Below are positions 1,789 through 45,141 of a DNA stretch of 64,000 nucleotides, in pieces. The translations under genes and the position numbers were made by a program. Each line of letters begins with the position of its first letter. The stretch's first letter is position 1. The notes under the pieces are model-generated. The model was not told where the DNA came from. It did not search any database and was given only the letters and a program-made list of their open reading frames with translations. Where the stretch lies: positions 186,001-250,000 of IMG/VR virus record IMGVR_UViG_3300022744_000020; one strand, 5' to 3'.

Positions 1789-1854
1789 ATGCTGGCTACA
1801 GATAAGTCCCGGCCCAAATTCCCCTCCATTTCTTTTCCTCTTTCCTCCAACACC

Positions 1855-4118: not shown

Positions 4119-5237
4119 ATGATTCCAGTCAATATTCTCAACACCAGTAAGACCGACTACGAGAGCCCAGCCCTACTGTTGGGGGAGCAGCGTCCCGGTC
4201 TCTTCGACACCATCCATCCTCATCATCCGAGACTGCGGAGTTTGTTCCGAGATCTGAGAAATCAAGATTGGGACGAATTGGAGTTCCCTTTTGACTCGTG
4301 TGTGCAGGAGTTCAAAACCTGTGCTGAGCATGAGTTCGATGCGCTGATGGATGTGATTGCCTATCAGTGGGAAACGGACTCGGTGGCGGCTCAGAGCTTG
4401 GTGCCCATCACCTCGCAGTTTGTTACCTCGAACATCCTCAACCGACTGTATGCCCGTATTGGTGAGAACGAATACTTGCATGCACCCACCTACTCAGAGA
4501 TCCTGAAAAACTCGTTCGAGAACCCGGATGACATCCTGAAGGACATTCATTCTCGCCAGCACTCCTTCGATCGCTTGGAGGGTGTCACCCACATCTACGA
4601 AGAGGCTCGAATCGCGGGCTTGGAGTACGGTCTCGGTCAGCGTCCGAACAACCAAGAGTTGTACGAGATCGCCATGAAGTACCTGCTGACCAACCTGGCG
4701 ATGGAGGGCGTTCAATTCACGCCTTCCTTCACGTTGGCTTTTGCCTATGGCAAGCAGGGTCGCTTCATGCCGGTGGCCGACGCCATCCAAAAGATCGCTG
4801 TGGATGAATACCACATCCACGTCCCGACGGGACAATACGTTCTGGATTGGGAATTCGGAACGGAGCGCGGGATCACGGCCTGGCATCGCCTGTCCAAGTG
4901 GTTTATCCAACTGGTTCGTGGGATTGTTCACACCGAATATTCCTGGAATGCGCGTCAATTCCGGGGTGGTCGTGAGCACATGGGTCTGACGAACGAGCTG
5001 CTGGACATGTATGTTCGATATTGCGCCACCAAGATCCTGAAGTCTCTCAAAATCCCGGTGCCGGAAGATCTCCTGCAGGAGAGAAATCCTCTGCCTTGGA
5101 CGGAACAGTGGTTGAATCCGAATCTACGACAAGGGTCGGCCCAAGAACAGCGCGGCGGTAACTATCTGCTCGGCGGATTCGTGAACGATATCGGACGCCG
5201 TCCTCTACCCGAATTCTATTTGGGTCCGAGAAAGTAA
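4119..5237 (+). CDS. nrdB: Class Ia ribonucleotide reductase beta subunit
   Basis: Di-metal ligands in ETDS, ENEYLH, MEGVQF, DEYHIH; radical Tyr in HAPTY; C-terminal GNY. Confidence 0.95.
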   Translation: MIPVNILNTSKTDYESPALLLGEQRPGLFDTIHPHHPRLRSLFRDLRNQDWDELEFPFDSCVQEFKTCAEHEFDALMDVIAYQWETDSVAAQSLVPITSQFVTSNILNRLYARIGENEYLHAPTYSEILKNSFENPDDILKDIHSRQHSFDRLEGVTHIYEEARIAGLEYGLGQRPNNQELYEIAMKYLLTNLAMEGVQFTPSFTLAFAYGKQGRFMPVADAIQKIAVDEYHIHVPTGQYVLDWEFGTERGITAWHRLSKWFIQLVRGIVHTEYSWNARQFRGGREHMGLTNELLDMYVRYCATKILKSLKIPVPEDLLQERNPLPWTEQWLNPNLRQGSAQEQRGGNYLLGGFVNDIGRRPLPEFYLGPRK

Positions 5238-5247
5238 TTCCTCCTCC

Positions 5248-5299
5248 ACTGGAGTACCCTCTTGGCTCAAAAGGCCAAGAGGGTACTCCAGTATTTTTT
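5248..5299 (+). terminator. Long terminator hairpin, CAAAA loop
   Basis: 20-bp stem ACTGGAGTACCCTCTTGGCT/GGCCAAGAGGGTACTCCAGT followed by a T run. Confidence 0.85.
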
Positions 5300-5302
5300 G
5301 GG

Positions 5303-5317
5303 ACATATATTCTCATT
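5303..5317 (+). promoter_or_regulatory. Phage promoter-like motif
   Basis: ACATATATTCTCATT, member of the repeated intergenic ATATA/ATACATCAT family. Confidence 0.55.
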
Positions 5318-5334
5318 ACGAAGTCAACAACCAC

Positions 5335-5348
5335 TCCTGAGAAAAGGA
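5335..5348 (+). promoter_or_regulatory. RBS hairpin TCCT-GAGAAA-AGGA
   Basis: One of five covarying copies; ATG 6 nt downstream. Confidence 0.65.
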
Positions 5349-5354
5349 TTTGAA

Positions 5355-5924
5355 ATGAATTTGCCCGAAATGACAATGGCCGGTGAGATTTACCGTAAAG
5401 TGCATGAGAATCCAGGTATCTGGGTTTCCAAGTCTGGGAGTTTCTGGCGTGAGGACAAGAAGTTATTCATGACCCCAGTCACCAAGGTAAATTTCGCGCT
5501 GGTAACCCCTCGGAATTATTGGTACGTCAACTATCGGCTGACCGGGGAGCGACCCGTCAGTTTGTTGATCAATCGCCTGATGGCAAAAGCCTGGAAGGAG
5601 AAGCCGGTGGGGTTGAAAGAATACGATACGCTCCCGGTAATTTACCGAGTAAACCCGACAACGCTAGAGTTGGCGTTGGATTTGACCAACATGGCTTACT
5701 GTGTCGTCAAAAATTACTACTACAATTTTGTTTGTGGTCAGGTAACGATTGGAGAGAAAGTCATCGAGTTCAAAAGCAATCGCCACTTGGGATTAATTTT
5801 AGAAGAGAACAAAATCTCTTTGAACAGAGAACAAATTCGAACCCTGTTCAGAAGAAAAAGAACAGAACACCCCACCATAAAGGGGTTTTCTCTGACGTAC
5901 TACGACGAAAACAAAGTCGCGTAA
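5355..5924 (+). CDS. Degenerate NUMOD4/HNH homing-endonuclease-like protein
   Basis: WVSKSG, YWYVNY, INRLMAKAW and TNMAY align by eye to the HNH family pattern; HNH histidines absent. Confidence 0.45.
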   Translation: MNLPEMTMAGEIYRKVHENPGIWVSKSGSFWREDKKLFMTPVTKVNFALVTPRNYWYVNYRLTGERPVSLLINRLMAKAWKEKPVGLKEYDTLPVIYRVNPTTLELALDLTNMAYCVVKNYYYNFVCGQVTIGEKVIEFKSNRHLGLILEENKISLNREQIRTLFRRKRTEHPTIKGFSLTYYDENKVA

Positions 5925-5951
5925 TCATTTCAACCACCACGAGGATCAGCC

Positions 5952-6623
5952 ATGCATCAGCTCAACACCCCTAGTCAGCAATTCCACCACGTCGGAGCGG
6001 TTGAAATTCGCCCCAATAATTTTGCTGTCACGTTGCCGTTCGAGATTCTTGATCGGAAAATAAATATCAGTACCCATAAAAGTCTCACGTGGGGAGAGAT
6101 TCATTCGCTTCTCAGTAAGCACACGCGTGAAGGTCTGCGCATGTTCTTGGTGACGACCAAGGGACAAAGTCATCTCGTCTTGGAGACGGACAAGAACATG
6201 AATCCAACGGATGCCCGGAAATTGGAGCAGGAGGTCTACCTGCTTTTGACCAAGGCCATTGGAAGAGATGAGAATTCCAACGACGTGAAGTCCAGCCGGA
6301 GTAGAAACCTCACCGTGTTCGGTTTCTATCACGGAGATGATGCTGTGAAGTTTCTCAACGCTTACCGGTATTTTCGTGAGCCGGCCGAGCCGTTGAAGAT
6401 CTCTGAAACTGGCATGATGATGTTCTATGCCGGAGAACTCCCTGTGTTGGTCAATGCAAAGAACATCAACTACATCCGTCAAGATCAGCGAAGCAGTGAG
6501 TCTGTCGTGATCTCCTTCATGTCGAGTTCGGTTTTTGTGACCTACCCGTCGGAAGAAATCGCTGAGAAAGTGATCCTGAAAGCACAAGAGTACCTGATGG
6601 GTGTGGTCCCCACCCTTTCGTAA
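5952..6623 (+). CDS. Hypothetical protein, paralog family A
   Basis: C-terminal VTYPSEEIAEKV motif shared with the next two genes. Confidence 0.8.
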   Translation: MHQLNTPSQQFHHVGAVEIRPNNFAVTLPFEILDRKINISTHKSLTWGEIHSLLSKHTREGLRMFLVTTKGQSHLVLETDKNMNPTDARKLEQEVYLLLTKAIGRDENSNDVKSSRSRNLTVFGFYHGDDAVKFLNAYRYFREPAEPLKISETGMMMFYAGELPVLVNAKNINYIRQDQRSSESVVISFMSSSVFVTYPSEEIAEKVILKAQEYLMGVVPTLS

Positions 6624-6648
6624 AACTTCTCATTTCTCGGAGTAAAAA

Positions 6649-7338
6649 ATGGATTATTCTAGCCTTACCTCGTGCCAGAAGCATTACCGTCCTATCAACG
6701 TGAACCCTTCGGACGAGCACAGTCGCGAGAAGGCCGTCTACCTGGGTAGTCACTTCTATTTGACGATTCCAAAGATTGTCGATGTTGTGATGACTTTGGA
6801 TCGACCCGCGGGCTTCTCTTTCAGTTTCACCGAACTGGAAGGAGAATGTTACATGCATTTCGAGTTCTCGAAAGAGGACTCTCCGGTCGAAATCTCGAAC
6901 CATTTGAAAGAGTTCGAGCGGAAAGCAATCGAAGCGGCCGGCGGGGCTCACAAAGTCGGTCGGATTTATCAGAAAAAGATCGGCAACTCGGTGGTGTTTG
7001 GATTCTCCATCGATAGTGCCGCGATTGATTTCTTGAGGACGTATCTGTTCTTTCGTGAGGTGGACAAGGTTCCAAACGGTAAGGAGCCGAAAGCTCGCCC
7101 GGTTGTGAAGTTCAAGAACGGATTCGTCACCCTCTTTGATGGCCTGACCTCCCTTATGTGCCGTTTGTCGGCAATTACCTACGTCTACTCGGGTGCGGGG
7201 GAAAGGACAGAAGACTCGGCGCGAACGATTTACCTGGGTGTGGATGGGGTGCCCCAGCACCTGAAGTTCCCCAGCCCAGAGATCGCGGAGACCGTCGTTT
7301 CCGTGGTTCAGAACAACCTCATGGAAATCGACAATTAA
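6649..7338 (+). CDS. Hypothetical protein, paralog family A
   Basis: C-terminal LKFPSPEIAETV. Confidence 0.8.
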   Translation: MDYSSLTSCQKHYRPINVNPSDEHSREKAVYLGSHFYLTIPKIVDVVMTLDRPAGFSFSFTELEGECYMHFEFSKEDSPVEISNHLKEFERKAIEAAGGAHKVGRIYQKKIGNSVVFGFSIDSAAIDFLRTYLFFREVDKVPNGKEPKARPVVKFKNGFVTLFDGLTSLMCRLSAITYVYSGAGERTEDSARTIYLGVDGVPQHLKFPSPEIAETVVSVVQNNLMEIDN

Positions 7339-7347
7339 GGAGCCAAC

Positions 7348-8058
7348 ATGCCCGCCCAATCCGAAAAAGAGTATTACACCCCCGTCGCACGATGTATTGG
7401 CGGGGTCATCCAACTTAACCCCCTTAACCCACTGGACGTCGGCTCTTTGGATGGTTTCTTAAACCGTAAGGTTTTCGAAGATCGAGAACCTATGCTGGTC
7501 TCCGAGTACCTCCGAATCAGCAAGGATTTCTGGAGAGGCGAAGGTCCGAGAGACACGCTGGACATCATCTACGAATGGAAGGACGAGCTCCATGTGGTTT
7601 TGGAGTATTTAAAAGCGGAGAGTCCGGCTAGGATGCGGATTAATGCCAGAGTCCTGACAAAAGCACTCGCCGAAGTGGGACAACTGGGAGATCACCCGCG
7701 ATTGTCTAATGTGCGCGAACTCTTCGCTCTTGGCGGACACAGCCTTTTCCCAAAGCTGAATGTTCTCAACGCTGTTCACTATCACAAAGGAATAGCTAGG
7801 GGAATGAAGCCAATCTGGAGGGACGAGTTAGAAAACGTCGGCTTCTTCACGGGCGAAGTAAGAATGATGGTTCAGAGGAAGCAGATTCTTTCGTATTGGT
7901 TCGGGGGCAATGGTTGTGCTGAAATTGAACTGAGTCCGTCTGAACTGGCTTTGATCATTGGGTCCAATAGTCAGCCAATTCGGATCAGTTATCCATCTCC
8001 AGACATTGCGGAGTCTGTTGCTGAATCCCTTGAAAAGATGATGGGTTCGTTGGGCTAA
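7348..8058 (+). CDS. Hypothetical protein, paralog family A
   Basis: C-terminal ISYPSPDIAESV; AAGGAG RBS. Confidence 0.8.
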   Translation: MPAQSEKEYYTPVARCIGGVIQLNPLNPLDVGSLDGFLNRKVFEDREPMLVSEYLRISKDFWRGEGPRDTLDIIYEWKDELHVVLEYLKAESPARMRINARVLTKALAEVGQLGDHPRLSNVRELFALGGHSLFPKLNVLNAVHYHKGIARGMKPIWRDELENVGFFTGEVRMMVQRKQILSYWFGGNGCAEIELSPSELALIIGSNSQPIRISYPSPDIAESVAESLEKMMGSLG

Positions 8059-8075
8059 CTGCCGGCAAAAAGATA

Positions 8076-8113
8076 CTGACAGCCACCAGCCATGAAAGGC
8101 TGGTGGCTGTCAG
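8076..8113. terminator. Bidirectional terminator between convergent genes
   Basis: 16-bp perfect stem CTGACAGCCACCAGCC-ATGAAA-GGCTGGTGGCTGTCAG. Confidence 0.8.
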
Positions 8114-8116
8114 GTC

Positions 8117-8191
8117 TTACTTTTCTTTCTTCTGAATCGGACCAAACCAAATCATCCAAAAGAGCCACGGGTTCAACATCAGAACGGCCAT
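8117..8191 (-). CDS. 24-aa Trp-rich membrane peptide MAVLMLNPWLFWMIWFGPIQKKEK
   Basis: Read by hand; ATG 3 nt after the amidase stop; fills the gap to the terminator. Confidence 0.5.
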   Translation of the reverse strand: MAVLMLNPWLFWMIWFGPIQKKEK

Positions 8192-8194
8192 GAC

Positions 8195-8689
8195 TTAAGC
8201 CTCGCTTGCGGAAAAGCCACCCACGACACTCTGAACCTTCAGGTCCCGATTCGGCGTCGGCACACCCTTCGGCCACCGAATACCGATCAGTCTCGCCAGC
8301 GGGAATTTCACGTCACTGACCCGGTTGCCCTGATTCCCCCCACGAACCACCAGATGCCCATCGGGCGTCTTTCCGAGGATGAAGCCCACGTGACCACCAC
8401 CTTCTCGTGCGAAGATGCCTACGGCCCCTTCCTGCGCGATGGTGAGGGGTTGTCCGAATTCCATCCAGTCACGTGCTCGGAAATAGTTTTCAGGCGGCTT
8501 GATTCCCACCTGGTTCAGGCAGTAAGCCACATAAACCCCACACCACGCCCCTGCGTTGATGGTGGGATTGAAACTGTCTGAGAACCACTTCGGTCCCAGT
8601 TTTTTTGCCCAGCCCTTGATTTCGATGGAGTTTTTGTTCTCCTCGAAGCCAAGATACTTCTTTCCTTCTTCAAGCCAAGGTGTCGACAT
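8195..8689 (-). CDS. NlpC/P60-CHAP-like peptidoglycan hydrolase (TIGR02594-like)
   Basis: PWLEEGKKYLG, AWCGVYV (Cys), GGGHVGFI (His), GGNQGNRV; GGAGG RBS before MSTPW. Confidence 0.85.
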   Translation of the reverse strand: MSTPWLEEGKKYLGFEENKNSIEIKGWAKKLGPKWFSDSFNPTINAGAWCGVYVAYCLNQVGIKPPENYFRARDWMEFGQPLTIAQEGAVGIFAREGGGHVGFILGKTPDGHLVVRGGNQGNRVSDVKFPLARLIGIRWPKGVPTPNRDLKVQSVVGGFSASEA

Positions 8690-14067: not shown

Positions 14068-14094
14068 CAGTCACATATAACCTATGTGAATCGA
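14068..14094 (+). promoter_or_regulatory. Phage promoter-like motif
   Basis: CAGTCACATATAACCTATGTGAATCGA, near-identical copy at 38763; contains the TCACAT/ATGTGA inverted repeat. Confidence 0.65.
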
Positions 14095-26125: not shown

Positions 26126-28894
26126 ATGTTTGAAATTTTGAGATCACTTGCTGGTATTCTCGATGTTCGAATCAACCGAAATGTCGTCACTGTCTCCGGA
26201 GTGAAGAAAGCCACAATCGAAGGCGGTATGAAGAAAGTGTTTGGCTCCGATAAGATCGCGGCCCACATTTTCAAAATCAAAAGCAACTCCTTCTCTTTTC
26301 AGGAGTGGTTCCTGCCAGATGTGGCTTTCGCTCTGCAGGAGATTGTCAACTCTCCCAAGTCTTACGCCGATCACAAAAGGACTTGTAAGCAAATTCTCAA
26401 TCAGCTTTACGAGAAGACATGGCTCGGTCGGATCAATACTGAAGCACCAAAGCGGCTTGACCGCTCCAAGCTTCGAGACATGGTCTTCACCCCTTTGGAT
26501 TTCCAGGAAGAGTTCTTCGACTATTTTGAGAAGAACGTCTACGCGTACAACCTGAAGGGTTTTCTTTTTGCTGGTGCGGCTGGTTCGGGCAAAGCCCAAC
26601 CAGACTCGGCACTCGTGAAAATCCCCAACGGATGGAAACCCATAGGGGAGATCAGAACCGGAGATTTAGTGGTCACGCCCGACGGAGCGCATGCTGTTGT
26701 TTCAGGTGTGTTTCCACAGGGAATGAAAAAAATCTACGAGATTTCCACGGTCGATGGTCGTCGCACTCAAGCGTGCCGTGAACACCTGTGGGAGATCATC
26801 ATTCCGGATCAGTCGATTTTCCGTGAACCGAAGGTGGTTAACACTCAGGCAGTTCTATCGCTGATCAGTTCCGGGATTCCGGTCTTTATTCCCACCACCA
26901 TTTGCTGCTCACCGACCGACATACCTCTCAGTGCAGATCCTGAGAAGTGCTCCCCAAGGGAGTTGATCGAAGCTTCATACGCCCAGAAAGAAGCCTTCTT
27001 TGTCGCTCAAGTGGGTCGAAAATATCGATACCTCAACAATTGGGCTCGAGTAACTGGCCAAGACCGAGAAGATTTCATCGCCCTCGTCAGGTCTTTTGGC
27101 GGGGTGATTGGACCAATCACGGAAGAAATGAGCCCGGACATTCTTCCGTACTACTTCGACTCTCTTGTTGAAATTGAGAACGTGCTTCTTGCCGAGGATC
27201 AATACGCTCGCTGCATCATGGTCGAAGATCCTCGTCATTTGTACGTGACCGATCAATACATCGCCACGCACAATACGTTTACCTCTTGCGCCCTGGCTCA
27301 TTGCTCTGGATCCGACAAGATCATCGTTGTTTGCCCGAACAACGCTTTGGATCGGGTTTGGAAAGATTCGGCTCTGACGGTGTTCAAGCAACCACAATCG
27401 GTCTGGATTAGTGACGGGAAAACCCCCTTTACTGGTAAAGAAAGATTCCTGGTATGTCACTATGAATGGCTGAGTAAGCTTCGAGCCAATCTGGACAAGA
27501 TTAGCTATCAGCGACTTACCGTCATTCTCGATGAATCGCACAACCTGAATGAGGCAGATAGCGGAAGAACCCAGAAATTCATTTCCCTGTGCGAGGAAGT
27601 GGACGCGGCTGAGGTCATCTGGCTTTCCGGCACTCCCATCAAAGCGCTTTCGACGGAAGCGATTCCCCTGATAAGATGTATCGACCCCTTGTTCACCCCG
27701 GAGGTGGAAGACATTTTCAAGGCCATCTTCCGAGGAGAAAACAACAAAGCGATTTCGATTCTCAAAAATCGAATCGGTCTGGTGTCGTTCAAGGTCGCCA
27801 AAGATCGTCTGGGTCTGAAAGAGCCACTCTTCACCAATTACAAGGTTGCGTTCCCGGGCGCTGAAGAGTTTACCCTCACCAAGATCCGGGAGAAGATGAC
27901 GGCCTTCATCCAACAGCGAGATGTCTACTATAAGTCTCGAGAAAAGGCCGATCTGGCTTACTACCAGAAAATCTTGGATCAGCACGCTGCAAAGCTGACG
28001 ACTCGTGAAGAAAAGGCGGAATTCGATCAATACGTTCGCAACGCGAACATGATACGCAAAACCCAAGGCATGGGCTGTTCAGACGAAATGAAGGCAGCCA
28101 ACCTCTATGAGCTGCGCAACATCATGCCTGGACTTAGCGCCGAGGATCGCATCAAGTTCAAGGAATCGAAGACGATCTACAAGTACCTCACCCTGAAGAT
28201 TCAAGGAGAATGCTTGGGTCAAATTGTTGGGCGTACCCGGATCGCTTGTCATGTTGAGTTGGCCAAACAGATCAAGTATGCTCCGATCCTTGAGTCGACT
28301 GAGAAGAAGACGGTTGTTTTCTCGTCATTCGTGGACGTGCTAAAAGCGGCTGAAGTGGAGCTGCAAGCTCAGCAGTATTCTCCAATGCTTGTTTACGGAG
28401 AAACCACCAGTAAACTGGCCCAGATAGTACAGCAGTTTGGAGAAGACGAATCAGTGAACCCGTTGGTGGCGACCTATGCTTCGTTGTCTACTGCGGTTCC
28501 TTTGATCATGGCCGACACCATGATTCTGATCGATGTGCCTTTCCGAGACTACATCCTTCAGCAAGCCGTGTCTCGAATCCATCGACTCGGACAGGTCAAC
28601 GACACACACATCTTCACGATCGTGCTGGATACTGGCAACGAGCCGAACATCTCTACCCGAACGGTGGACATTCTGCGCTGGTCACAACAGCAAATCGAAT
28701 CTATCTTGGGCATCAAGTCTCCTTTTGAAATCAAGGACGGGGAAGAGATCGCACTCGAAGCCATGGAAAGTCTGGATGATATCGACCTGACGCAAGTGGT
28801 CGATCCGTTCTTTGCTGGACTCAAGCAGATGGATCAATTCATCGATCCGGACGTGGTTGAAGTCTCTGTTGAAAACACCTATCTCTCTTGGTAA
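26126..28894 (+). CDS. SNF2/SF2 helicase precursor containing an intein
   Basis: GAAGSGK|T (split by the intein), ILDESH, LSGTP, VVFSSF, QAVSRIHRLGQ. Confidence 0.92.
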   Translation: MFEILRSLAGILDVRINRNVVTVSGVKKATIEGGMKKVFGSDKIAAHIFKIKSNSFSFQEWFLPDVAFALQEIVNSPKSYADHKRTCKQILNQLYEKTWLGRINTEAPKRLDRSKLRDMVFTPLDFQEEFFDYFEKNVYAYNLKGFLFAGAAGSGKAQPDSALVKIPNGWKPIGEIRTGDLVVTPDGAHAVVSGVFPQGMKKIYEISTVDGRRTQACREHLWEIIIPDQSIFREPKVVNTQAVLSLISSGIPVFIPTTICCSPTDIPLSADPEKCSPRELIEASYAQKEAFFVAQVGRKYRYLNNWARVTGQDREDFIALVRSFGGVIGPITEEMSPDILPYYFDSLVEIENVLLAEDQYARCIMVEDPRHLYVTDQYIATHNTFTSCALAHCSGSDKIIVVCPNNALDRVWKDSALTVFKQPQSVWISDGKTPFTGKERFLVCHYEWLSKLRANLDKISYQRLTVILDESHNLNEADSGRTQKFISLCEEVDAAEVIWLSGTPIKALSTEAIPLIRCIDPLFTPEVEDIFKAIFRGENNKAISILKNRIGLVSFKVAKDRLGLKEPLFTNYKVAFPGAEEFTLTKIREKMTAFIQQRDVYYKSREKADLAYYQKILDQHAAKLTTREEKAEFDQYVRNANMIRKTQGMGCSDEMKAANLYELRNIMPGLSAEDRIKFKESKTIYKYLTLKIQGECLGQIVGRTRIACHVELAKQIKYAPILESTEKKTVVFSSFVDVLKAAEVELQAQQYSPMLVYGETTSKLAQIVQQFGEDESVNPLVATYASLSTAVPLIMADTMILIDVPFRDYILQQAVSRIHRLGQVNDTHIFTIVLDTGNEPNISTRTVDILRWSQQQIESILGIKSPFEIKDGEEIALEAMESLDDIDLTQVVDPFFAGLKQMDQFIDPDVVEVSVENTYLSW
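26594..27274 (+). mobile_element. Class 3 intein (227 aa) with decayed endonuclease region
   Basis: Starts AQPDSA, ends IATHN/T; block B REHLW, block F ARCIMV, block G ATHN give the W-C-T triplet. Confidence 0.9.
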
Positions 28895-38263: not shown

Positions 38264-38671
38264 ATGAATCGTTTCATCTGCCTCATCGTTCTGTTTCTCT
38301 CCCTCGGTGCCCAGGCGCAAGTCGTACCGCCAGCAAATCTGAGCATCGATCCGTATGCGGATCGAATCACGGCGTGGCTGAAGAAAAATTCGCGCGTCTA
38401 CCAGTGCGCTGATTCAGCCGTGAACCGACTGGTGGAAGATCGCAACGCGATTGTGACCCCTCAGGAATATGGGCGGATCGTCACGATTTGCTCGTCCTTC
38501 CCAGCGGCCAATCCAGGGTCGGCGATGCTTGGGGAGGAGCTCGACTACATGTGGTACGTGAAACCGCATGACCAAAAGCAACTCGCCGAGAAGAAGGCCG
38601 GTCGTCGTTGGCAAGACGTCGACGGGTACCTTCACTTTCCAGACGGCACCATCAGCAGTTCTCCCATGTAA
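38264..38671 (+). CDS. Secreted hypothetical protein
   Basis: Signal peptide MNRFICLIVLFLSLGAQA. Confidence 0.75.
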   Translation: MNRFICLIVLFLSLGAQAQVVPPANLSIDPYADRITAWLKKNSRVYQCADSAVNRLVEDRNAIVTPQEYGRIVTICSSFPAANPGSAMLGEELDYMWYVKPHDQKQLAEKKAGRRWQDVDGYLHFPDGTISSSPM

Positions 38672-38762: not shown

Positions 38763-38790
38763 CAGTCACATATAACCAATGTGAATCGAG
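38763..38790 (+). promoter_or_regulatory. Phage promoter-like motif
   Basis: CAGTCACATATAACCAATGTGAATCGAG, near-identical to 14068. Confidence 0.65.
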
Positions 38791-38840: not shown

Positions 38841-39143
38841 ATGCCCTTCCTCGCCCAAATCGCTGGCATCACCCTTCAAATCGTGCAGGTCTGCACACCG
38901 ACTCCGGAGTATCTGGCAGCAAAAGCCGCTCAGATGCCGCAAGCCCAGATCATGATGATCCAGCCCGCCAAGTGCGTCAACACGGGTCATTCCCTGATTG
39001 GCAAAAAGTTCTACTCCCCGGGCATTAGCGACCAATCGATGCGCACCTGCAAGCTTCAGCAAGATTACTGGAAGTGGGTTGCTTCAAAGCAAGGAGTGAC
39101 CATCACCAGTTGGTGCCTGATTGGCTCAGTCACGGCGAAATGA
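38841..39143 (+). CDS. Hypothetical protein
   Basis: GGAG 6 nt before ATG 38841. Confidence 0.65.
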   Translation: MPFLAQIAGITLQIVQVCTPTPEYLAAKAAQMPQAQIMMIQPAKCVNTGHSLIGKKFYSPGISDQSMRTCKLQQDYWKWVASKQGVTITSWCLIGSVTAK

Positions 39144-39174
39144 TCCGTGACCTGTGTTCGGTTTCATCTCGTCG

Positions 39175-39208
39175 AGAATAGGGGTTCGCCCCTATTCTTT
39201 TTTTTTTT
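39175..39208 (+). terminator. Rho-independent terminator
   Basis: AGAATAGGGG-TTCG-CCCCTATTCT plus T run. Confidence 0.9.
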
Positions 39209-39230
39209 GCCGTCTTCTATTAAAATTAAA

Positions 39231-39243
39231 CCCTATATCATCC
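39231..39243 (+). promoter_or_regulatory. Phage promoter-like motif
   Basis: CCCTATATCATCC, compare CCTATATCATC at 50847. Confidence 0.5.
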
Positions 39244-39275
39244 ATTTGCCAGTAACCCCCATGGGCTTTAGCGTA

Positions 39276-39758
39276 ATGGAAAAAAATCAAGCCATTCAAT
39301 TATTCTGGGTAGATGTCTCTCGCGCTGTTTCAAATGCTAAAGCAAATAAACTCCAGGTACATGTGGAGCGCTTTTCTTCGGATCAATGTGACGAGTTTAG
39401 ACTAATTGCAGGCGAATCCATTAAGGAGATAATGTTGAAAGATCAACCACGGAAGAAGTCCCTGATGTTTTACTGGGTCTTCTTGGCCCTCGTTTATTTG
39501 TTGGTGGGCGTGACGATTTACTTCAATGGATCTCAATGGTCCAGACAAAAGGACATCGAAGAAGCCGTGGCTGCTATGTACCTCGACTGCACCGAGCAAG
39601 CCCCACTGCAACGAATCCAAGAAGGTGTTTCACCCTCTCAGCATTTGCTTCTTTGCGGGGAGAGCAGCATGGCTTACCGAGCCATGCTGAAGAAATCAAT
39701 GCCAGATCCGCTGATCCAGGTGTTTGCATGGCCCGCCTTCATTTGGGGTAAAGTGTGA
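39276..39758 (+). CDS. Single-TM membrane protein
   Basis: LMFYWVFLALVYLLVGVTIYF. Confidence 0.7.
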   Translation: MEKNQAIQLFWVDVSRAVSNAKANKLQVHVERFSSDQCDEFRLIAGESIKEIMLKDQPRKKSLMFYWVFLALVYLLVGVTIYFNGSQWSRQKDIEEAVAAMYLDCTEQAPLQRIQEGVSPSQHLLLCGESSMAYRAMLKKSMPDPLIQVFAWPAFIWGKV

Positions 39759-39761
39759 GCT

Positions 39762-40286
39762 TTGCGATCTTTGTTTCCACGAAAGACGATAGGTGATAAA
39801 TTGATACTGCAAAACGTCTCGTTGAGACTGGCTACTCGCCCGTCCGACAAACGTCGAGATAAAATCGATGGTCCGGTGAACGTGATCATTCGAATTCTCG
39901 ACCATCTGACCGAAACTCACCCTACTGACCATGGGGTGGATTATTGGTTCGAAGAAGAAAGGCTTTGGGCCTATCAAGATCCCAGCATTCAAGTCCATGA
40001 ATTCCGTTTCAACAATGTGGACTGGATGAAGCCTGGAAGCATCAATCGAGAGCAAGCGCAGTCGATTGCCAAGATCCTGATCGAAGCAAACAAGAACAAT
40101 CACAACGTGCTCGTTCACTGCGTGCAAGGAGAGTCGCGCAGTGCCGCCGTTGTCAAAGCAGCGCTCCAGTCGTTCAAAGACGCCACGTGCCCCACTGAAA
40201 TTCCGTGGTGCAACAACAGCGTTTGCGATGTGATCAAGTACGAGATTCTCCGGGCTAATCGCCGGGAAGATCGTGCACCTCAGTAG
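39762..40286 (+). CDS. Cys-dependent protein tyrosine/dual-specificity phosphatase-like protein
   Basis: VLVHCVQGESRSAAV (HCx5R) and an upstream D-containing loop FNNVDW; start uncertain. Confidence 0.8.
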   Translation: MRSLFPRKTIGDKLILQNVSLRLATRPSDKRRDKIDGPVNVIIRILDHLTETHPTDHGVDYWFEEERLWAYQDPSIQVHEFRFNNVDWMKPGSINREQAQSIAKILIEANKNNHNVLVHCVQGESRSAAVVKAALQSFKDATCPTEIPWCNNSVCDVIKYEILRANRREDRAPQ

Positions 40287-41178
40287 ACCCACGCTCGCCA
40301 AGAAGGCGATTTCCAACCCCTCAGCAAGAAAGGCTGAACTCGTGACCACCAAACAAAAATCCGTCAAAATCGGGAAGATACTAGGATGCGCCGTTATCGG
40401 CGGCGTCGCCTTGTATTTCGCCGTCAAAATTCTGATTGCCACCATGGCGATCGTGGCCGCTGGAGCGATCGGCTTCACGGCTGTGATGCTCTACCCGACG
40501 TTCCTGGAGCTGTTGGCTTACAACCAGCTCCAAGGAATGATTGCCATCTGGAAAGGCAATCCTGGTTTTGCCTTGCGGCGAAATCTCTTCGACATGAACG
40601 AGGATCACCAAAACCGATCCAAATCGACACTGCAACTCATCGGGGTTGGGCGCACCCTAGAAGATCGCCACGCCGAATCTTCCCGTCGATATCCGGACTC
40701 AGCAACCACCAGGTCTCTCCTGAGCCGAATCGACATGGTTCGTAAATCGGTTGATCATCAAAAGAAATTACTCGCCAATTCGGCTCAGGCTCTCGAGGCG
40801 TACGAGGCGCGGATTGAAGAGCTGGAATTTGATTGGGAGTCCGATCAGCAGATCAACAAGGCCGCGGGCATCTTGTCGGCGCTTACCGGACAAAGTCGCC
40901 GAGCCGCCATGCGTCAGGTGCGCGAAGACACGGCGCTCAAAGCGATCCGCAGCCAAGCAGCCGAAGCCATGGCGGCACTTGAGATGTCTCAACTCGAAGG
41001 AAACGCATTCACCCGCGAGGTCGAAGTCTCGGCTCGCGAGAGTCGGATGGCCGAAGATCAGCGACAGAAGGATCGCGACCGCACCATCGAAGCAGCGCCC
41101 CAACTGGAAAACGAATCCCGCCGTGGGCTGTTCGACAGCTTTCAGCAACAAGATTCTCGTCAAACCCAAAAGAAGTAA
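40273..41178 (+). CDS. Membrane-anchored coiled-coil protein (PspA/IM30-like architecture)
   Basis: Two N-terminal hydrophobic helices, then long heptad segments; start may be later. Confidence 0.6.
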   Translation: MHLSRPTLAKKAISNPSARKAELVTTKQKSVKIGKILGCAVIGGVALYFAVKILIATMAIVAAGAIGFTAVMLYPTFLELLAYNQLQGMIAIWKGNPGFALRRNLFDMNEDHQNRSKSTLQLIGVGRTLEDRHAESSRRYPDSATTRSLLSRIDMVRKSVDHQKKLLANSAQALEAYEARIEELEFDWESDQQINKAAGILSALTGQSRRAAMRQVREDTALKAIRSQAAEAMAALEMSQLEGNAFTREVEVSARESRMAEDQRQKDRDRTIEAAPQLENESRRGLFDSFQQQDSRQTQKK

Positions 41179-41187
41179 AGGTCCATC

Positions 41188-41349
41188 ATGCGCCTGCTTT
41201 TTGCTACTCTCGTTCTGGCAGCCTGCTTGGCCGTCGCCTACTTCCGTTCGGAAGGTACCCTGGGACTGCCCGAAATGAATATGCCCTCCAGTGGAGCACC
41301 AGCCCCCGCGCCCGCCACTCCGGCCGGCACTTCTTCCTTCAAGCTCTGA
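41188..41349 (+). CDS. 53-aa membrane/secreted peptide not in the ORF track
   Basis: MRLLFATLVLAACLAVAYFRSEG...PAPAPATPAGTSSFKL, fills the gap between two co-oriented genes. Confidence 0.7.
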   Translation: MRLLFATLVLAACLAVAYFRSEGTLGLPEMNMPSSGAPAPAPATPAGTSSFKL

Positions 41350-41365
41350 ACCAAGGACTTCTCAA

Positions 41366-42283
41366 ATGAAAAAGCTTTTCCTCGGCCTGATCGTGGCCCT
41401 GTTCTCCTTCCAGGTGTTCGCTCAGTCGAAGCCTCTGATCCTCATTGGAGGCTCGAACACCGAGTCTTCGATGTACTCGGCCATGGCCAGAGAGATCATC
41501 GGAACCTGTCGGGCTGAGGTGGCCGCCGCCTCTGGGTACACCCTCACTCAGGGGTTCAGCACCGGTACGGTGGACACCTTCGGCAAGATGCGAGCCAAAG
41601 CAGGCTGGGTGGCATTTGCCCAAGACGACATCCGCCAACTCTACATGAACAATGAGAAGGCTTCGATGGCCGGTTTCCTTCCGCTGATGGGGCTGAATCA
41701 TGAAGCTTATCATTTCATCGGTCCGGCTTCGGTTAAAGACGGATGGTTCGGTAAAAAGGCTCCCCAACTGGTGGAAGATCTGAGCGGCATGACCATCGCA
41801 GTTACCGAAACGGGAATGCTGAGCCTTCGTTGGTACATGCACTTGACGGGTATTGCGTTGAATCCGGTTCAGTTCGCTGATTCGGATGCGGCGATCGACG
41901 CCGTTAAAACCGGCAAAGCGGCTGCTGCATTGATCGTGACTTCTCGCGACAACCCGGCTATTGAACAGATGGGGAAGAAGACTGGCGGCTCGCTGAAGCT
42001 GCTGGGTCTGAGCAAGGCCCATGCTGACAAACTCAAGGCGGCGGGCTATCTGATCGAATCGTTGTCCTACCCGGGCTTGGGAATGGCGGTCACGGCGTGG
42101 ACCCGGGTGGTTCTGATGGCTCAGAACTTCAATGCACCTGATCGTCGGAGTGGTATTTCCGCTCTGCGCAAGTGCATTTCCGACAACCTGCCTGAGCTGA
42201 TCGACGAAGCAACCTTCACGTCGGCAGCATGGCGCGGGGTGGATCTGAAGGCCCCGATCAAGGCCGAAGAACTCTGGAAGTAA
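41366..42283 (+). CDS. TAXI-family-like periplasmic solute-binding protein
   Basis: Signal peptide VFA|Q; GG...MY; STGTVDT; AFAQDD; LNHEAYHFI; VEDLSGMTIAV. Confidence 0.7.
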   Translation: MKKLFLGLIVALFSFQVFAQSKPLILIGGSNTESSMYSAMAREIIGTCRAEVAAASGYTLTQGFSTGTVDTFGKMRAKAGWVAFAQDDIRQLYMNNEKASMAGFLPLMGLNHEAYHFIGPASVKDGWFGKKAPQLVEDLSGMTIAVTETGMLSLRWYMHLTGIALNPVQFADSDAAIDAVKTGKAAAALIVTSRDNPAIEQMGKKTGGSLKLLGLSKAHADKLKAAGYLIESLSYPGLGMAVTAWTRVVLMAQNFNAPDRRSGISALRKCISDNLPELIDEATFTSAAWRGVDLKAPIKAEELWK

Positions 42284-42302
42284 AACTCTTCTGGTTTGAA
42301 GC

Positions 42303-42337
42303 GGGCGGATGGTTTCGGCCATCCGCTCTTTCTTTTT
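42303..42337 (+). terminator. Rho-independent terminator
   Basis: GGGCGGATGGT-TTCG-GCCATCCGCTC plus T run. Confidence 0.85.
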
Positions 42338-42347
42338 AGTTTGGAGC

Positions 42348-42845
42348 ATGGAAATGAAACTCGATCAAATTGAACAAAACTTAAGCTGGTTCACTCAGAA
42401 CCTGACCGCTGGATTTGTTGTAAATCTCATTGCCTCAAATCCACAAAAGACTTTCCTTTTAGCAAACCAAATAAAAAGGGCTCTTGATCCAGAAGAAACT
42501 AAGTTGGATTTTCTGGATCAAGACGCTTTCAGCCAAGAGGTGTCCGGCTGGGACCAATATCACGAATGGGTTGGAAAGCGTCGGCAACAACTCGGTCAAG
42601 AAGGCAAAGTTTTGGTACTTTGTGGAGTTCCTTCTTGGGTTCGCACCGTAACCCAAGAAGACGTGCTCACTGATTCAGGTGACACTACTGAGAACCTCTG
42701 GGTGTTCCAAAAATTCACCCGATGGATACAGGAATTGGATTGCGTTATTTCTGAAAACCGAAATGGAGACTTATTGCTTCACAAACTCCGAGGGGTTGCA
42801 AATGCAACATTTAGTTTGCGTGACCCATTGATCATTTCAAGTTGA
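42348..42845 (+). CDS. Hypothetical protein (possible degenerate RecA/DnaB-like fold)
   Basis: GGAG RBS; IASNPQKT, KVLVLCG, LLLHKLRG. Confidence 0.6.
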   Translation: MEMKLDQIEQNLSWFTQNLTAGFVVNLIASNPQKTFLLANQIKRALDPEETKLDFLDQDAFSQEVSGWDQYHEWVGKRRQQLGQEGKVLVLCGVPSWVRTVTQEDVLTDSGDTTENLWVFQKFTRWIQELDCVISENRNGDLLLHKLRGVANATFSLRDPLIISS

Positions 42846-44035: not shown

Positions 44036-44629
44036 ATGAACGACGATTACTGCAACACCTGCCCCACCAATTCCAAGGGCAGCATCACGAACTGTTTGGC
44101 CACCACCTGCTCTCAACGCGATCTGATGGTTGAGGAGAATTGGCTTCTTGGCCGACTGATCACCGAACATCATCGGATTGTTGCCACTATTAAAAGGGGC
44201 AACCAGATTGTCGAAGAGAATCGTCTTCGCCGTGAGGCTTACACCAAAACCCCCGTGGTCTGGTCTGGCCTGACACTCACTCAGGAGGTCATTGATGATG
44301 CTGAGCGGCTGATCAAATCTCGACTGATGGAGAGTGTTCTGAAGCTTCTGCAAAGCCATGGCGCCACGCCTGCTCAAGCGCAACAGATCTACGATGAACG
44401 CAAGCTTGCGACGGATCTTCCGATTCCCGACAGCTACACGTTCAGCAACGGGTTCATTCTCGGCAAGATGAAAACCCGTGAGCTTTTCGCTCGGATCAAC
44501 GAGCGCCGGATCATGATGGCTGTGAAGTTGGCAATGGACAGCTTCAATGAAAACCATCCCAACATGGACACTGCCGGGTTGCTCAGGATTTTCCACGACG
44601 ACATCAAGAAAACCACGGATCAACTCTGA
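44036..44629 (+). CDS. Hypothetical protein with Cys-rich N-terminus
   Basis: CNTC...NC...TC. Confidence 0.75.
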   Translation: MNDDYCNTCPTNSKGSITNCLATTCSQRDLMVEENWLLGRLITEHHRIVATIKRGNQIVEENRLRREAYTKTPVVWSGLTLTQEVIDDAERLIKSRLMESVLKLLQSHGATPAQAQQIYDERKLATDLPIPDSYTFSNGFILGKMKTRELFARINERRIMMAVKLAMDSFNENHPNMDTAGLLRIFHDDIKKTTDQL

Positions 44630-45141
44630 TGAAACATCTGATCATCACCTACCTGCCGTACGTGCTCAGCACCATCACCATCTACCAGGTGTTTTTGGCA
44701 GGAAACAAAAACGTTCACGCGTGGATCATTGGGATGGGTAACCAGGTGCTCTGGTTGACTTGGATTCTTGTCAGCCAGAATTATGGTCTTCTCCCGATGA
44801 ACGTCGCGATGTGGGTCCTGTACACCCGCAACCATTTCAAATGGAGGAAAGAGGCTTCAAACCTCAAGAAGAAATCCCAACCGATAATCCACCCCACTCG
44901 CGAATTGGCTGTTTATCCTTGCGGTCTGCATTCGATTTCTTTCCTCACTTATCACGCGAGAACCGACCACTCTCCGGTGGTGGAGTGTCGCTTAGTGAGT
45001 GAGGATGATTTTCGCGGATGCGGGAAAGTCAAGTTCTCTACCGAAGAAGTTTCTTTCGACGATATGAGGCAAGCCTACGATTTGGCTCAGGTTGACCTTC
45101 AACAAACCATCTCTAAATATTGCGGACCTCAAAAATGCTGA
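44629..45141 (+). CDS. Half-size PnuC-like membrane domain fused to a soluble domain
   Basis: Three TM helices with AWIIGMGNQVLW and LYTRNHFKW. Confidence 0.55.
   Translation: MKHLIITYLPYVLSTITIYQVFLAGNKNVHAWIIGMGNQVLWLTWILVSQNYGLLPMNVAMWVLYTRNHFKWRKEASNLKKKSQPIIHPTRELAVYPCGLHSISFLTYHARTDHSPVVECRLVSEDDFRGCGKVKFSTEEVSFDDMRQAYDLAQVDLQQTISKYCGPQKC

What the first reader, a model, noticed from the sequence alone, without database searches (positions are those of the whole stretch)
39276..42283. Envelope operon: TM protein, Cys-phosphatase, PspA-like coiled coil, 53-aa peptide and TAXI-like binding protein
Seen in sequence: five tightly packed genes between a promoter motif (39231) and a terminator (42303). 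They include an unannotated 53-aa membrane peptide and a secreted solute-binding protein with no TRAP permease beside it. Established: TAXI proteins normally serve TRAP transporters, and PspA/IM30 proteins polymerise on stressed inner membranes. Inference: an orphan periplasmic sensor, a small TM peptide and a membrane-anchored coiled coil form an undescribed trans-envelope module, for example for membrane protection, superinfection exclusion or ligand sensing, possibly linked to dephosphorylation.
Basis: partly seen in the sequence, partly recalled or inferred. Interest (0 to 1): 0.66.

Follow-up and report, generated by a model that had tools for sequence, protein, structure and literature searches.

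The report
Conserved jumbo-phage binding-protein membrane triad
The last three genes of this operon (a two-helix membrane protein with a long helical cytoplasmic domain, a tiny membrane peptide and a secreted TAXI-type binding protein) form a module that recurs in many large phages of Gram-negative bacteria, always without a transporter permease, and its function has not been studied.

Summary
Five tightly packed + strand genes lie between two strong terminator hairpins in a 270-kb phage genome. A recurrent phage motif sits 32 nt before the first gene.

The 305-aa product is a secreted TAXI-fold binding protein. The model has pLDDT 92, the top PDB matches are all TAXI proteins, and the family profile hits 1US4 at 1.5e-20. 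Neither this genome nor five other complete phage genomes carrying its relatives encode a DctM-type permease.

The 53-aa ORF is a real gene. A relative whose binding protein is 80% identical differs from it at 15 synonymous and 3 non-synonymous codons.

The main result is the order [two-TM helical protein ~250-300 aa]-[42-64 aa TM peptide]-[TAXI-like protein]. It recurs in:
- Ralstonia phage RP12, and phiRSL1 with an insertion;
- Achromobacter phage Motura;
- Vibrio phages RYC, K406 and Va1;
- every metagenomic contig that had upstream sequence.

The identity matrices of the two large proteins correlate (r 0.79).

The TM protein (g1) and the Cys-phosphatase-like protein (g2) are not part of this conserved set. 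"PspA-like" is only a weak fold lead: Vipp1/PspA fill the top ten Foldseek rows at E 0.014-0.055, but HMM and profile comparisons find nothing.

Function is unknown. The best guess is a phage-owned, permease-independent, binding-protein-dependent inner-membrane device. I found no description of it in the papers searched.

The parts
39174..39209 (+). Intrinsic terminator-like hairpin plus T-run that closes the upstream unit
   Evidence: 11-pair stem, 5 G-C pairs, followed by a run of T
39234..39244 (+). Recurrent phage motif TATATCATCCA, a candidate promoter element 32 nt before the g1 ATG
   Evidence: 8 + strand copies in the genome at one mismatch or fewer, 6 of them upstream of a likely gene start; not a sigma-70 consensus match
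39276..39758 (+). g1: 160-aa bitopic membrane protein (hydrophobic segment at residues 61-86, RKK before it). No relatives found; not part of the conserved triad
39762..40286 (+). g2: 174-aa Cys-phosphatase-like protein (dual-specificity P-loop VLVHCxxGxSRS). TTG start is uncertain; not conserved with the triad
   Evidence: Pfam DSPc E 1.8e-6 (28.2 bits, cut-off 33.5); phrog_5614 at 5.5e-8; PDB DUPD1 at 1.1e-3
40342..41178 (+). g3: membrane protein with a two-helix TM hairpin and a cytoplasmic all-helical domain of about 220 aa. It is 278 aa from the GTG at 40342; the longest ORF starts at 40273 (301 aa)
   Evidence: Hydrophobic stretch at residues 31-78 of the 301-aa form, with a K/R-rich N flank. 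AF2 model shows a helical hairpin at 97-139/144-205 with pLDDT 86-92. phrog_27316 at 9e-6. Profile A5 finds RP12 at 3.6e-53, phiRSL1 at 1.6e-32, Motura at 6e-32 and RYC at 1e-13. Start:
41188..41349 (+). g4: 53-aa peptide with an N-terminal hydrophobic helix, a Pro/Ala/Ser-rich tail and a C-terminal FKL. It is either a membrane anchor or a cleavable signal peptide; this is undecided
   Evidence: 15 synonymous and 3 non-synonymous codon differences to L026. An analogous 42-64-aa ORF sits in the same position in all related loci
41366..42283 (+). g5: secreted TAXI-type solute-binding protein homologue, 305 aa, with a signal peptide ending VFA|QS
   Evidence: AF2 pLDDT 92.3. Foldseek top hits are 4DDD, 9IBP, 8U79, 1US4 and 9IBO. 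Atlas TM 0.83. Profile A1 against 1US4 scores 1.5e-20. phrog_6856 at 6.7e-16
42303..42337 (+). Intrinsic terminator-like hairpin that closes the operon
   Evidence: 11-pair stem, 7 G-C pairs, T-rich tail

Best explanation
g3, g4 and g5 are one conserved functional module of large phages that infect Gram-negative bacteria. g1 and g2 are lineage-specific passengers in the same operon.

Shown: the three genes are kept together and in order, often with overlapping stop and start codons. They are inherited as a unit. g5 is a TAXI-fold binding protein with a signal peptide. No TRAP permease exists in these phages.

Inferred from sequence:
- g5 is exported to the periplasm. It keeps most residues that bind the alpha-amino and alpha-carboxyl groups of glutamate in the Vibrio cholerae TAXI protein VcGluP, so it probably binds a small amino-acid-like ligand.
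- g4 puts a short flexible tail with a conserved hydrophobic C-terminus into the periplasm.
- g3 is anchored by a TM hairpin with both ends in the cytoplasm, and carries a long helical-hairpin domain there.

Proposed mechanism (inference): the phage supplies its own membrane partners, g3 and g4, for the binding protein in place of a TRAP permease. The three form an inner-membrane complex that couples ligand occupancy of g5 in the periplasm to the membrane-bound helical domain of g3 in the cytoplasm. The purpose would be sensing, or membrane stabilisation or remodelling during infection, rather than solute transport.
For: Synteny of [~250-300 aa two-TM helical protein]-[42-64 aa TM peptide]-[~300 aa TAXI-like protein] is seen in:
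- Va1;
- contigs L003, L004, L006, L015, L016 and L017, and an ENA contig;
- RP12 and Motura;
- RYC and K406;
- phiRSL1, where ORF096 is the g3 homologue and two extra genes lie between it and the peptide and binding-protein genes.

The g3 profile finds the neighbours at E 1e-13 to 4e-53. The g3 and g5 identity matrices correlate, r 0.79, Mantel p 2e-4 over 12 modules. g4 is under purifying selection.

The TAXI fold and homology of g5 rest. The equivalents of VcGluP residues Y45, S75, Q93 and E125 are kept in 50-57 of 57 family members, with residue roles taken from PMC11574862. A Cys pair is nearly invariant.

There is no DctM in six complete or near-complete phage genomes.

For g3, the TM hairpin and K/R-rich N flank come, and the confident helical hairpin.

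The module sits in a discrete operon bounded by terminators.
Against: No physical interaction has been shown.

Correlated divergence may reflect shared phage ancestry only.

The g3 model is poor outside the hairpin (mean pLDDT 64), and its fold matches are generic.

It is not settled whether g4 stays in the membrane or is cleaved. In several homologues small residues precede the aromatic pair after the hydrophobic stretch.

In g5's own subclade two second-lobe loops differ from the family consensus: GAVGGS becomes AVTETG and VGGAP becomes VTSRD. Ligand binding may therefore differ or be weakened.

In other phages the neighbours are metabolic genes (NAD salvage, polyamine, ModAB-like), which fits a nutrient-uptake role as well.
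Confidence: 0.4

Rival explanations
1. Auxiliary metabolic gene. g5 is a nutrient-scavenging binding protein that docks onto the host's own TAXI-TRAP (or other) permease to raise uptake of an amino-acid-like or carboxylate nutrient during infection, as cyanophage PstS does with the host Pst system (own knowledge). g3 and g4 merely tether or concentrate it at the membrane, or have a separate role.
For: Ligand-binding residues are conserved. The module's neighbours in other phages include PRPP synthetase and NAPRT-like genes (RYC; L007), an NMNAT/Nudix gene and pncB (phiRSL1), polyamine synthases (Motura), and a ModA-like binding protein with an ABC permease (RP12). Membrane tethering of TAXI proteins is discussed for cellular systems (PMC11574862).
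Against: The viral clade is far from cellular TAXI proteins: 13-17% identity to solved ones, and g5 scores only 12 bits on Pfam NMT1_3. It is found in phages of Vibrio, Ralstonia and Achromobacter with 20-50% identity among themselves, so docking onto each host's permease would need repeated re-adaptation. The two membrane partners are as conserved in position as the binding protein. This phage lacks the NAD-salvage genes.
Confidence: 0.25
2. Envelope guard. The triad senses or blocks events in the periplasm of an infected cell. It could act in superinfection exclusion, or in lysis timing as T4 Imm/Sp or RI/T do (own knowledge). For example, g5 might bind a peptidoglycan-derived amino-acid head group released by a second phage's tail lysozyme.
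For: All three products are envelope proteins. They are expressed as a separate operon in a region rich in other secreted or membrane proteins. Only large lytic phages carry it. The pocket keeps alpha-amino and alpha-carboxyl binding residues that would also fit the free D-centre of diaminopimelate (inference).
Against: There is no similarity to any known exclusion or lysis-inhibition protein, and no hit in PADLOC. No lysis genes were identified next to it. No experiment bears on it.
Confidence: 0.15
3. Peptide signal and receptor. g4 is cleaved by signal peptidase and released as a small periplasmic peptide whose conserved C-terminus (FKL, YKL, YKF, MKF, ...F) is the ligand of g5. g3 transduces the signal.
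For: The hydrophobic stretch of g4 is short (17-20 residues), and in several homologues it is followed by small residues at -3 and -1 before an aromatic pair. A hydrophobic C-terminal residue recurs after a variable low-complexity linker.
Against: The pocket residues that bind a free alpha-amino group are conserved, and a peptide C-terminus lacks such a group. C-termini are not uniform; some end in K, Q or G. There is no support from any interaction test.
Confidence: 0.05
4. No joint function. The three genes are adjacent only because they travel in the same variable region of related phages.
For: Function is untested, and correlated divergence can come from common descent.
Against: The same order is kept across phage lineages that share little else (RP12 is phiKZ-related, PMC5468394; Mieseafarmvirus RSL1, Moturavirus and Vibrio phages of 144-195 kb), while the flanking genes differ in every case. 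Stop and start codons frequently overlap.
Confidence: 0.05

Closest known systems
TAXI-type TRAP solute-binding proteins (Thermus GluBP 1US4/8U79, Vibrio cholerae VcGluP 8S4J/9IBO, VCA0144 9IBP, Ehrlichia 4DDD)
   Same: Same two-lobe fold and detectable homology. Sec signal peptide. Conserved equivalents of the Tyr, Ser, Gln and Glu residues that hold the amino-acid head group in VcGluP.
   Different: A separate viral clade with 13-17% identity to solved proteins. There is no Q/M permease gene in any of six phage genomes. It is always paired with a two-TM helical protein and a mini-peptide, which TRAP systems lack.
PspA / Vipp1 (IM30) / ESCRT-III membrane-remodelling proteins, and the phage-encoded PspA modules reported in huge phages (bioRxiv 10.64898/2026.10.24.761521)
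   Same: Long helical hairpin followed by further helices. Vipp1/PspA chains fill Foldseek ranks 1-10. One relative (L015) has an SPFH/Band_7 gene immediately upstream, a neighbour also reported for phage PspA, as are transport proteins.
   Different: No PspA_IM30 HMM match. hhalign gives 3.7% probability. Foldseek E-values are only 0.014-0.055 with TM 0.2-0.3. An integral TM hairpin replaces the amphipathic N-terminal helix. Generic coiled-coil hairpins score as well.
Cyanophage PstS and other phage-borne binding proteins used as auxiliary metabolic genes (own knowledge)
   Same: A phage carries a periplasmic binding protein without the matching permease.
   Different: Those genes are close copies of host genes and work with the host transporter. 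Here the protein is deeply diverged and comes with two dedicated phage membrane proteins.
Binding-protein-dependent membrane sensors such as LuxP-LuxQ (own knowledge)
   Same: A periplasmic binding protein reports ligand occupancy to a membrane protein, not to a transporter.
   Different: g3 has no kinase, HAMP or other recognisable output domain, and almost no periplasmic loop. Contact would have to go through g4 or the membrane surface.
Two-component spanins Rz/Rz1
   Same: A membrane-anchored coiled-coil protein is followed by a very small Pro-rich envelope peptide. g4 has an LAAC lipobox-like string.
   Different: g3 has two TM helices, so its helical domain is predicted to be cytoplasmic. 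The Cys of g4 is absent from the L004, RP12, Motura and Va1 homologues. A 300-aa binding protein is no part of spanin cassettes.

Membership tests
TAXI family of TRAP solute-binding proteins (Pfam NMT1_3, PF16868) | Type II periplasmic-binding fold of the TAXI kind | tested here: met
   AF2 model has pLDDT 92.3. Seven of the top ten Foldseek PDB rows are TAXI proteins at E 9e-15 to 2e-12, TM 0.56-0.70. The Atlas model has TM 0.83 to an NMT1_3 cluster.
TAXI family of TRAP solute-binding proteins (Pfam NMT1_3, PF16868) | Sequence homology to TAXI proteins | tested here: met
   g5 alone scores only 12.1 bits against a cut-off of 27. The profile of 57 clade members hits 1US4 at 1.5e-20, 4DDD at 1.2e-16 and 8S4J at 3.3e-16. 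Several relatives carry a precomputed PF16868 hit.
TAXI family of TRAP solute-binding proteins (Pfam NMT1_3, PF16868) | Ligand-contact residues as in VcGluP (Y45, S75, Q93, H123, E125) | tested here: inconclusive
   Across the clade: Tyr 55/57, Ser/Thr 50/57, Gln 53/57, His 39/57 (Asn in g5), Glu 57/57. The second-lobe loops of g5 differ from the consensus. No ligand was tested.
TAXI family of TRAP solute-binding proteins (Pfam NMT1_3, PF16868) | Works with a TRAP Q/M membrane permease, usually encoded beside it | tested here: not met
   No DctM (PF06808) match in this genome or in the phiRSL1, RP12, Motura, RYC and Va1 genomes. Use of a host permease could not be tested.
PspA / IM30 (PF04012) | Match to the family HMM or profile | tested here: not met
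   No Pfam hit for g3 or seven relatives. No six-frame hit in the genome, while 13 of 14 control genomes hit. hhalign against E. coli PspA gives 3.7% probability.
PspA / IM30 (PF04012) | ESCRT-III-like fold (hairpin alpha1-alpha2/3, then alpha4 and alpha5) | tested here: inconclusive
PspA / IM30 (PF04012) | Peripheral membrane binding through an N-terminal amphipathic helix | tested here: not met
   g3 and all its homologues instead have an integral hydrophobic hairpin of about 45 residues.
Dual-specificity / Cys-based protein phosphatases (PF00782) | HCx5R(S/T) P-loop | tested here: met
   HCVQGESRS lies within VLVHC...SRSA and aligns to the P-loops of DUPD1 and poxvirus H1 phosphatase.
Dual-specificity / Cys-based protein phosphatases (PF00782) | Family HMM above the curated threshold over the whole domain | tested here: not met
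   28.2 bits against a cut-off of 33.5, and only profile positions 60-93 of 133 are matched. The fold of g2 was not predicted.
Two-component spanin (Rz/Rz1) | The o-spanin is an outer-membrane lipoprotein with a conserved lipobox Cys; the i-spanin has one N-terminal TM and a periplasmic coiled coil | tested here: not met
   The Cys is not conserved in g4 homologues. g3 has two TM helices, with K/R-rich flanks that predict a cytoplasmic helical domain.

The most novel reading that the evidence does not exclude
The triad is a previously unrecognised class of binding-protein-dependent trans-membrane device owned by large phages. A TAXI-derived periplasmic receptor has exchanged its TRAP permease for a mini-peptide and a membrane-anchored ESCRT-III/PspA-like helical protein. 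The infected cell can then read a periplasmic amino-acid-like cue (a nutrient, or a peptidoglycan fragment that signals attack by another phage) and respond at the inner membrane, for example by stabilising it or by timing lysis.
Probability: 0.25. Interest if true: 0.8.

Novelty: new variant of a known kind. Interest (0 to 1): 0.62.

Why it matters
Binding proteins of the TAXI kind are known only as feeders of TRAP transporters. Here a whole viral clade of them is kept for long evolutionary times with two small membrane partners and no permease. The exhaustive search found 89 cluster representatives, and all those inspected lie in phage-like contexts. That points to a second way of using such proteins.

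The module occurs in cultured phages: RP12, phiRSL1, Motura and several Vibrio phages. Its role can therefore be tested directly by deletion, pull-down and ligand screening.

It adds a concrete, widely conserved example to the recent view that large phages manipulate the host envelope. It also shows that an unannotated gene of about 50 codons belongs to it.

Tried and rejected
- **Complex prediction.** Complex prediction was run on mature g5 with the g4 tail. Searches found the machine busy. One search returned 'no answer' (score 0.08, mark 0.32). This is evidence neither for nor against binding and is not used.
- **Word-index protein searches.** They found almost nothing: g5 gave one 80% relative, g3 gave none, and the g3 profile gave two fragments or relatives.
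- **Scans for related loci.** Three IMG/VR scans returned no relatives. The metagenome scan returned only the window's own contig and L004. Two alignments were too diverse for pattern scans, so genome contigs was never searched.
- **Direct searches of the phage collection.** megablast with the operon and tblastn with g5 at E 1e-5 found nothing. Relatives appeared only at looser thresholds or with a closer query.
- **PspA membership.** Rejected on HMM and profile evidence.
- **Spanin reading.** Rejected; see the membership test.
- **Link to NAD salvage.** Considered because of the neighbours in RYC, phiRSL1 and L007. This phage has no NAPRTase or PRPP-synthetase gene, and the RYC 'putative phosphatase' is unrelated to g2.
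- **Other checks.** The Va1 gene upstream of the triad is unrelated to g2. PADLOC gave no hits.


Full report
**Setting.** The window is bases 186001-250000 of a 270,383-bp IMG/VR virus record that CheckV rates 98% complete. It carries no tRNA gene. It encodes a ribonucleotide reductase large subunit and a large helicase. It is therefore a jumbo phage, with G+C near 50%.

**What is in the sequence.**

Five + strand ORFs are packed between 39276 and 42283:

| Gene | Coordinates | Length |
|---|---|---|
| g1 | 39276-39758 | 160 aa |
| g2 | 39762-40286 | 174 aa |
| g3 | 40273-41178 (longest ORF) | 301 aa |
| g4 | 41188-41349 | 53 aa |
| g5 | 41366-42283 | 305 aa |

- g3 more probably starts at the GTG at 40342. 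That codon follows an AGAAAGG box and matches where the homologues begin, giving 278 aa.
- The two strongest terminator-like hairpins of the region bracket the set: 39174-39199 with a T-run, and 42303-42328.
- A sigma-70 scan finds nothing near 39231.
- The 11-mer TATATCATCCA at 39234 occurs eight times on the + strand of the genome at one mismatch or fewer. Six copies lie a few tens of bases before a likely start codon.
- The 336-aa antisense ORF at 41339-42349 overlaps g5 completely and is best read as a mirror ORF.

**The individual products.**

- *g1* has one central hydrophobic segment and no detectable relatives.
- *g2* carries the dual-specificity-phosphatase P-loop. It matches Pfam DSPc at E 1.8e-6, below the curated cut-off, phrog_5614 at 5.5e-8, and human DUPD1 at 1.1e-3.
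- *g5* begins with a typical Sec signal peptide.
  - An AlphaFold2 model built on 57 relatives has pLDDT 92.3.
  - Seven of its ten best Foldseek PDB rows are TAXI proteins (4DDD, 9IBP, 8U79, 1US4, 9IBO, 8S4J) at E 9e-15 to 2e-12.
  - The family profile hits 1US4 at 1.5e-20.
  - The ESM Atlas model has TM 0.83 to an NMT1_3 cluster.
  - On its own, g5 scores only 12 bits on the Pfam model.
- *g5 pocket.* The equivalents of the VcGluP residues that hold the alpha-amino and alpha-carboxyl groups of glutamate (PMC11574862) are kept across the clade: Tyr 55/57, Ser/Thr 50/57, Gln 53/57, Glu 57/57. A Cys pair is nearly invariant. In g5's own subclade two loops of the second lobe depart from the consensus.
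- *g4* is a real gene. In a relative whose binding protein is 80% identical (L026) it differs by 15 synonymous and 3 non-synonymous codons. That ratio is stricter than for g5 (103 and 60) or the g3 C-terminal half (72 and 43).
- *g3* has a K/R-rich N-terminus and a hydrophobic stretch of about 45 residues that reads as two TM helices joined by one or two residues. The rest is all-helical. By the positive-inside rule both ends are cytoplasmic.

**Is g3 PspA-like?** Only as a weak lead.

- The model is confident for a helical hairpin (residues 97-139 and 144-205, pLDDT 86-92) and poor elsewhere.
- Vipp1/PspA chains fill Foldseek ranks 1-10, but at E 0.014-0.055 and TM about 0.2-0.25.
- The Atlas shape search returns generic coiled coils.
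- The PspA_IM30 HMM finds nothing in g3, in its relatives or anywhere in the genome.
- A profile comparison with E. coli PspA gives 3.7% probability.
- An integral TM hairpin stands where PspA has an amphipathic helix.

**The decisive finding: a conserved triad.**

An exhaustive HMMER search with g5 gave 89 cluster representatives at E <= 1e-3. Every look-up that returned upstream sequence showed the same order: a protein of about 250-270 aa, a 42-64-aa ORF, then the binding protein. This holds for L003, L004, L006, L015, L016 (its peptide gene was not called) and an ENA contig. In L017 the contig end cuts the first gene, and in L007 only the peptide and the binding protein fit on the contig.

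The same triad is present in cultured phages:

- Vibrio phage Va1, where the peptide is unannotated;
- Ralstonia phage RP12, ORF195/194/193;
- Achromobacter phage Motura, gp278/277/276;
- Vibrio phages RYC and K406;
- phiRSL1, where ORF096 is the g3 homologue and a small membrane protein and a Lar-like gene have been inserted before ORF100/ORF101.

A profile of the g3 family finds these neighbours at E 3.6e-53 (RP12), 1.6e-32 (phiRSL1), 6e-32 (Motura) and 1e-13 (RYC). BFVD structure matches point to RP12 and two other uncharacterised phage proteins of similar length.

Stop and start codons often overlap. Pairwise identities of the g3-like and g5-like proteins across 12 modules correlate (r 0.79, Mantel p 2e-4). 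This shows inheritance as a unit, though not physical contact.

The flanking genes differ in every lineage. g1 and g2 have no counterparts next to the other triads.

None of six complete or near-complete phage genomes with the triad has a DctM-type permease.

**Recurrent small features.** The mini-peptides share an M-K/R start, a hydrophobic stretch of 17-20 residues often ending in G/A-Y-F, a low-complexity Pro/Ser/Ala/Gln tail, and frequently a C-terminal aromatic-Lys-Leu/Phe or a terminal Phe. The closest g3 relatives share a C-terminal LFxxF/W motif after a disordered linker. Whether g4 is a membrane anchor or a cleaved signal peptide cannot be settled from sequence.

**Interpretation.**

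The fold test is passed for the 305-aa protein and left open for the 301-aa protein.

The most economical reading is that large phages of Proteobacteria carry a TAXI-derived periplasmic binding protein that works with two phage-encoded inner-membrane partners instead of a TRAP permease. I take the likeliest mechanism to be a ligand-dependent membrane complex that links the periplasm to the cytoplasmic helical domain of g3 (confidence 0.4).

The rivals are:
- an auxiliary metabolic role through a host permease (0.25). Metabolic neighbours in other phages favour it. The depth of divergence and the constant partners argue against it.
- an exclusion or lysis-timing sensor (0.15);
- a peptide-and-receptor pair (0.05);
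- mere adjacency (0.05).

**Comparison with the literature.**

[quoted passage not shown] I found no paper that treats the three genes as a module or tests them.

A 2026 preprint reports Pfam-confirmed PspA genes in huge phages, often next to SPFH and transport genes. The g3 family is not detected by that criterion. One relative has an SPFH gene immediately upstream, so the two themes may be related.

**Limits.**

- No expression or read data could be obtained.
- The complex prediction gave no verdict.
- The g3 alignment is shallow, at eight sequences.
- Bacterial genomes were not searched for the triad.

Noticed in passing
window 38767-38789 and 14072-14094; also genome positions 64926, 121423, 134153, 167350, 168169: A conserved element of about 60 nt with core CACATATAACCAATGTGAATCGA occurs seven times, on the + strand only. 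At least three copies follow a terminator. It looks like a second class of phage promoter or 5' leader. It overlaps the nominal GTG start at 38781, so that gene more likely starts at the ATG at 38841.
   Followed up: partly
window 44629-45141 (+): A 170-aa multi-TM protein whose first ~85 residues weakly match the PnuC nicotinamide-riboside/NMN transporter family (PF04973, E 1.2e-4, below the cut-off). It may be a half-size, SemiSWEET-like relative. This is notable because triads in other phages sit next to NAD-salvage genes.
   Followed up: partly
L020 (Vibrio phage RYC) 4347-6843; L012 (phiRSL1) 5365-8420; L007 1582-3206: In three lineages the triad is followed within 0.4-1.5 kb by NAD-salvage or NAD-reconstitution-type genes: PRPP-synthetase-like plus NAPRT/NAMPT-like, or NMNAT/Nudix plus pncB. 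The window's phage has neither.
   Followed up: partly
L014 (Achromobacter phage Motura) 4926-7751; L013 (RP12) 4924-6449; L015 1673-2533: Other neighbours of the triad are homospermidine synthase and glutathionylspermidine synthase (Motura), a ModA-like SBP_bac_11 protein plus an ABC permease (RP12), and an SPFH/Band_7 protein (L015).
   Followed up: partly
window 38264-38671 (+): A 135-aa ORF with a clear signal peptide and no family match lies upstream of the operon. It is another secreted product in this region.
   Followed up: no
window 41339-42349 (-): A 336-aa open frame runs antisense across all of g5. It has no support as a gene and is probably a mirror ORF of the G+C-rich coding strand.
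   Followed up: no
window 41116-41133 (g3 residues 282-287 of the 301-aa form); same position in L003, L004, L006: A C-terminal LFxxF/W motif follows a disordered, charged linker in the closest g3 relatives. It is a candidate short docking motif of unknown partner.
   Followed up: no
L012 (phiRSL1) 2543-3668: In phiRSL1 a 51-aa ORF, a 99-aa membrane protein and a 225-aa protein with an N-terminal Lar (restriction alleviation) domain lie between the g3 homologue (ORF096) and the peptide and binding-protein pair (ORF100/101). The module therefore tolerates insertion.
   Followed up: partly
L019 (Ralstonia phage RsoM2USA) 1599-4004: A variant arrangement: a 308-aa multi-TM helical protein that the g3 profile does not detect, then a 122-aa TM protein with a long Pro/Glu/Lys-rich tail in place of the mini-peptide, then the binding protein.
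   Followed up: no
window 1789-4107 and 26126-28894 (+): A ribonucleotide reductase large subunit (phrog_84, 2e-195) and a 922-aa helicase (phrog_62, 9.5e-94). Most other large ORFs tested (610, 1035, 1108-1132 and 517 aa) have no informative family match in PHROGs or, where tested, Pfam.
   Followed up: no
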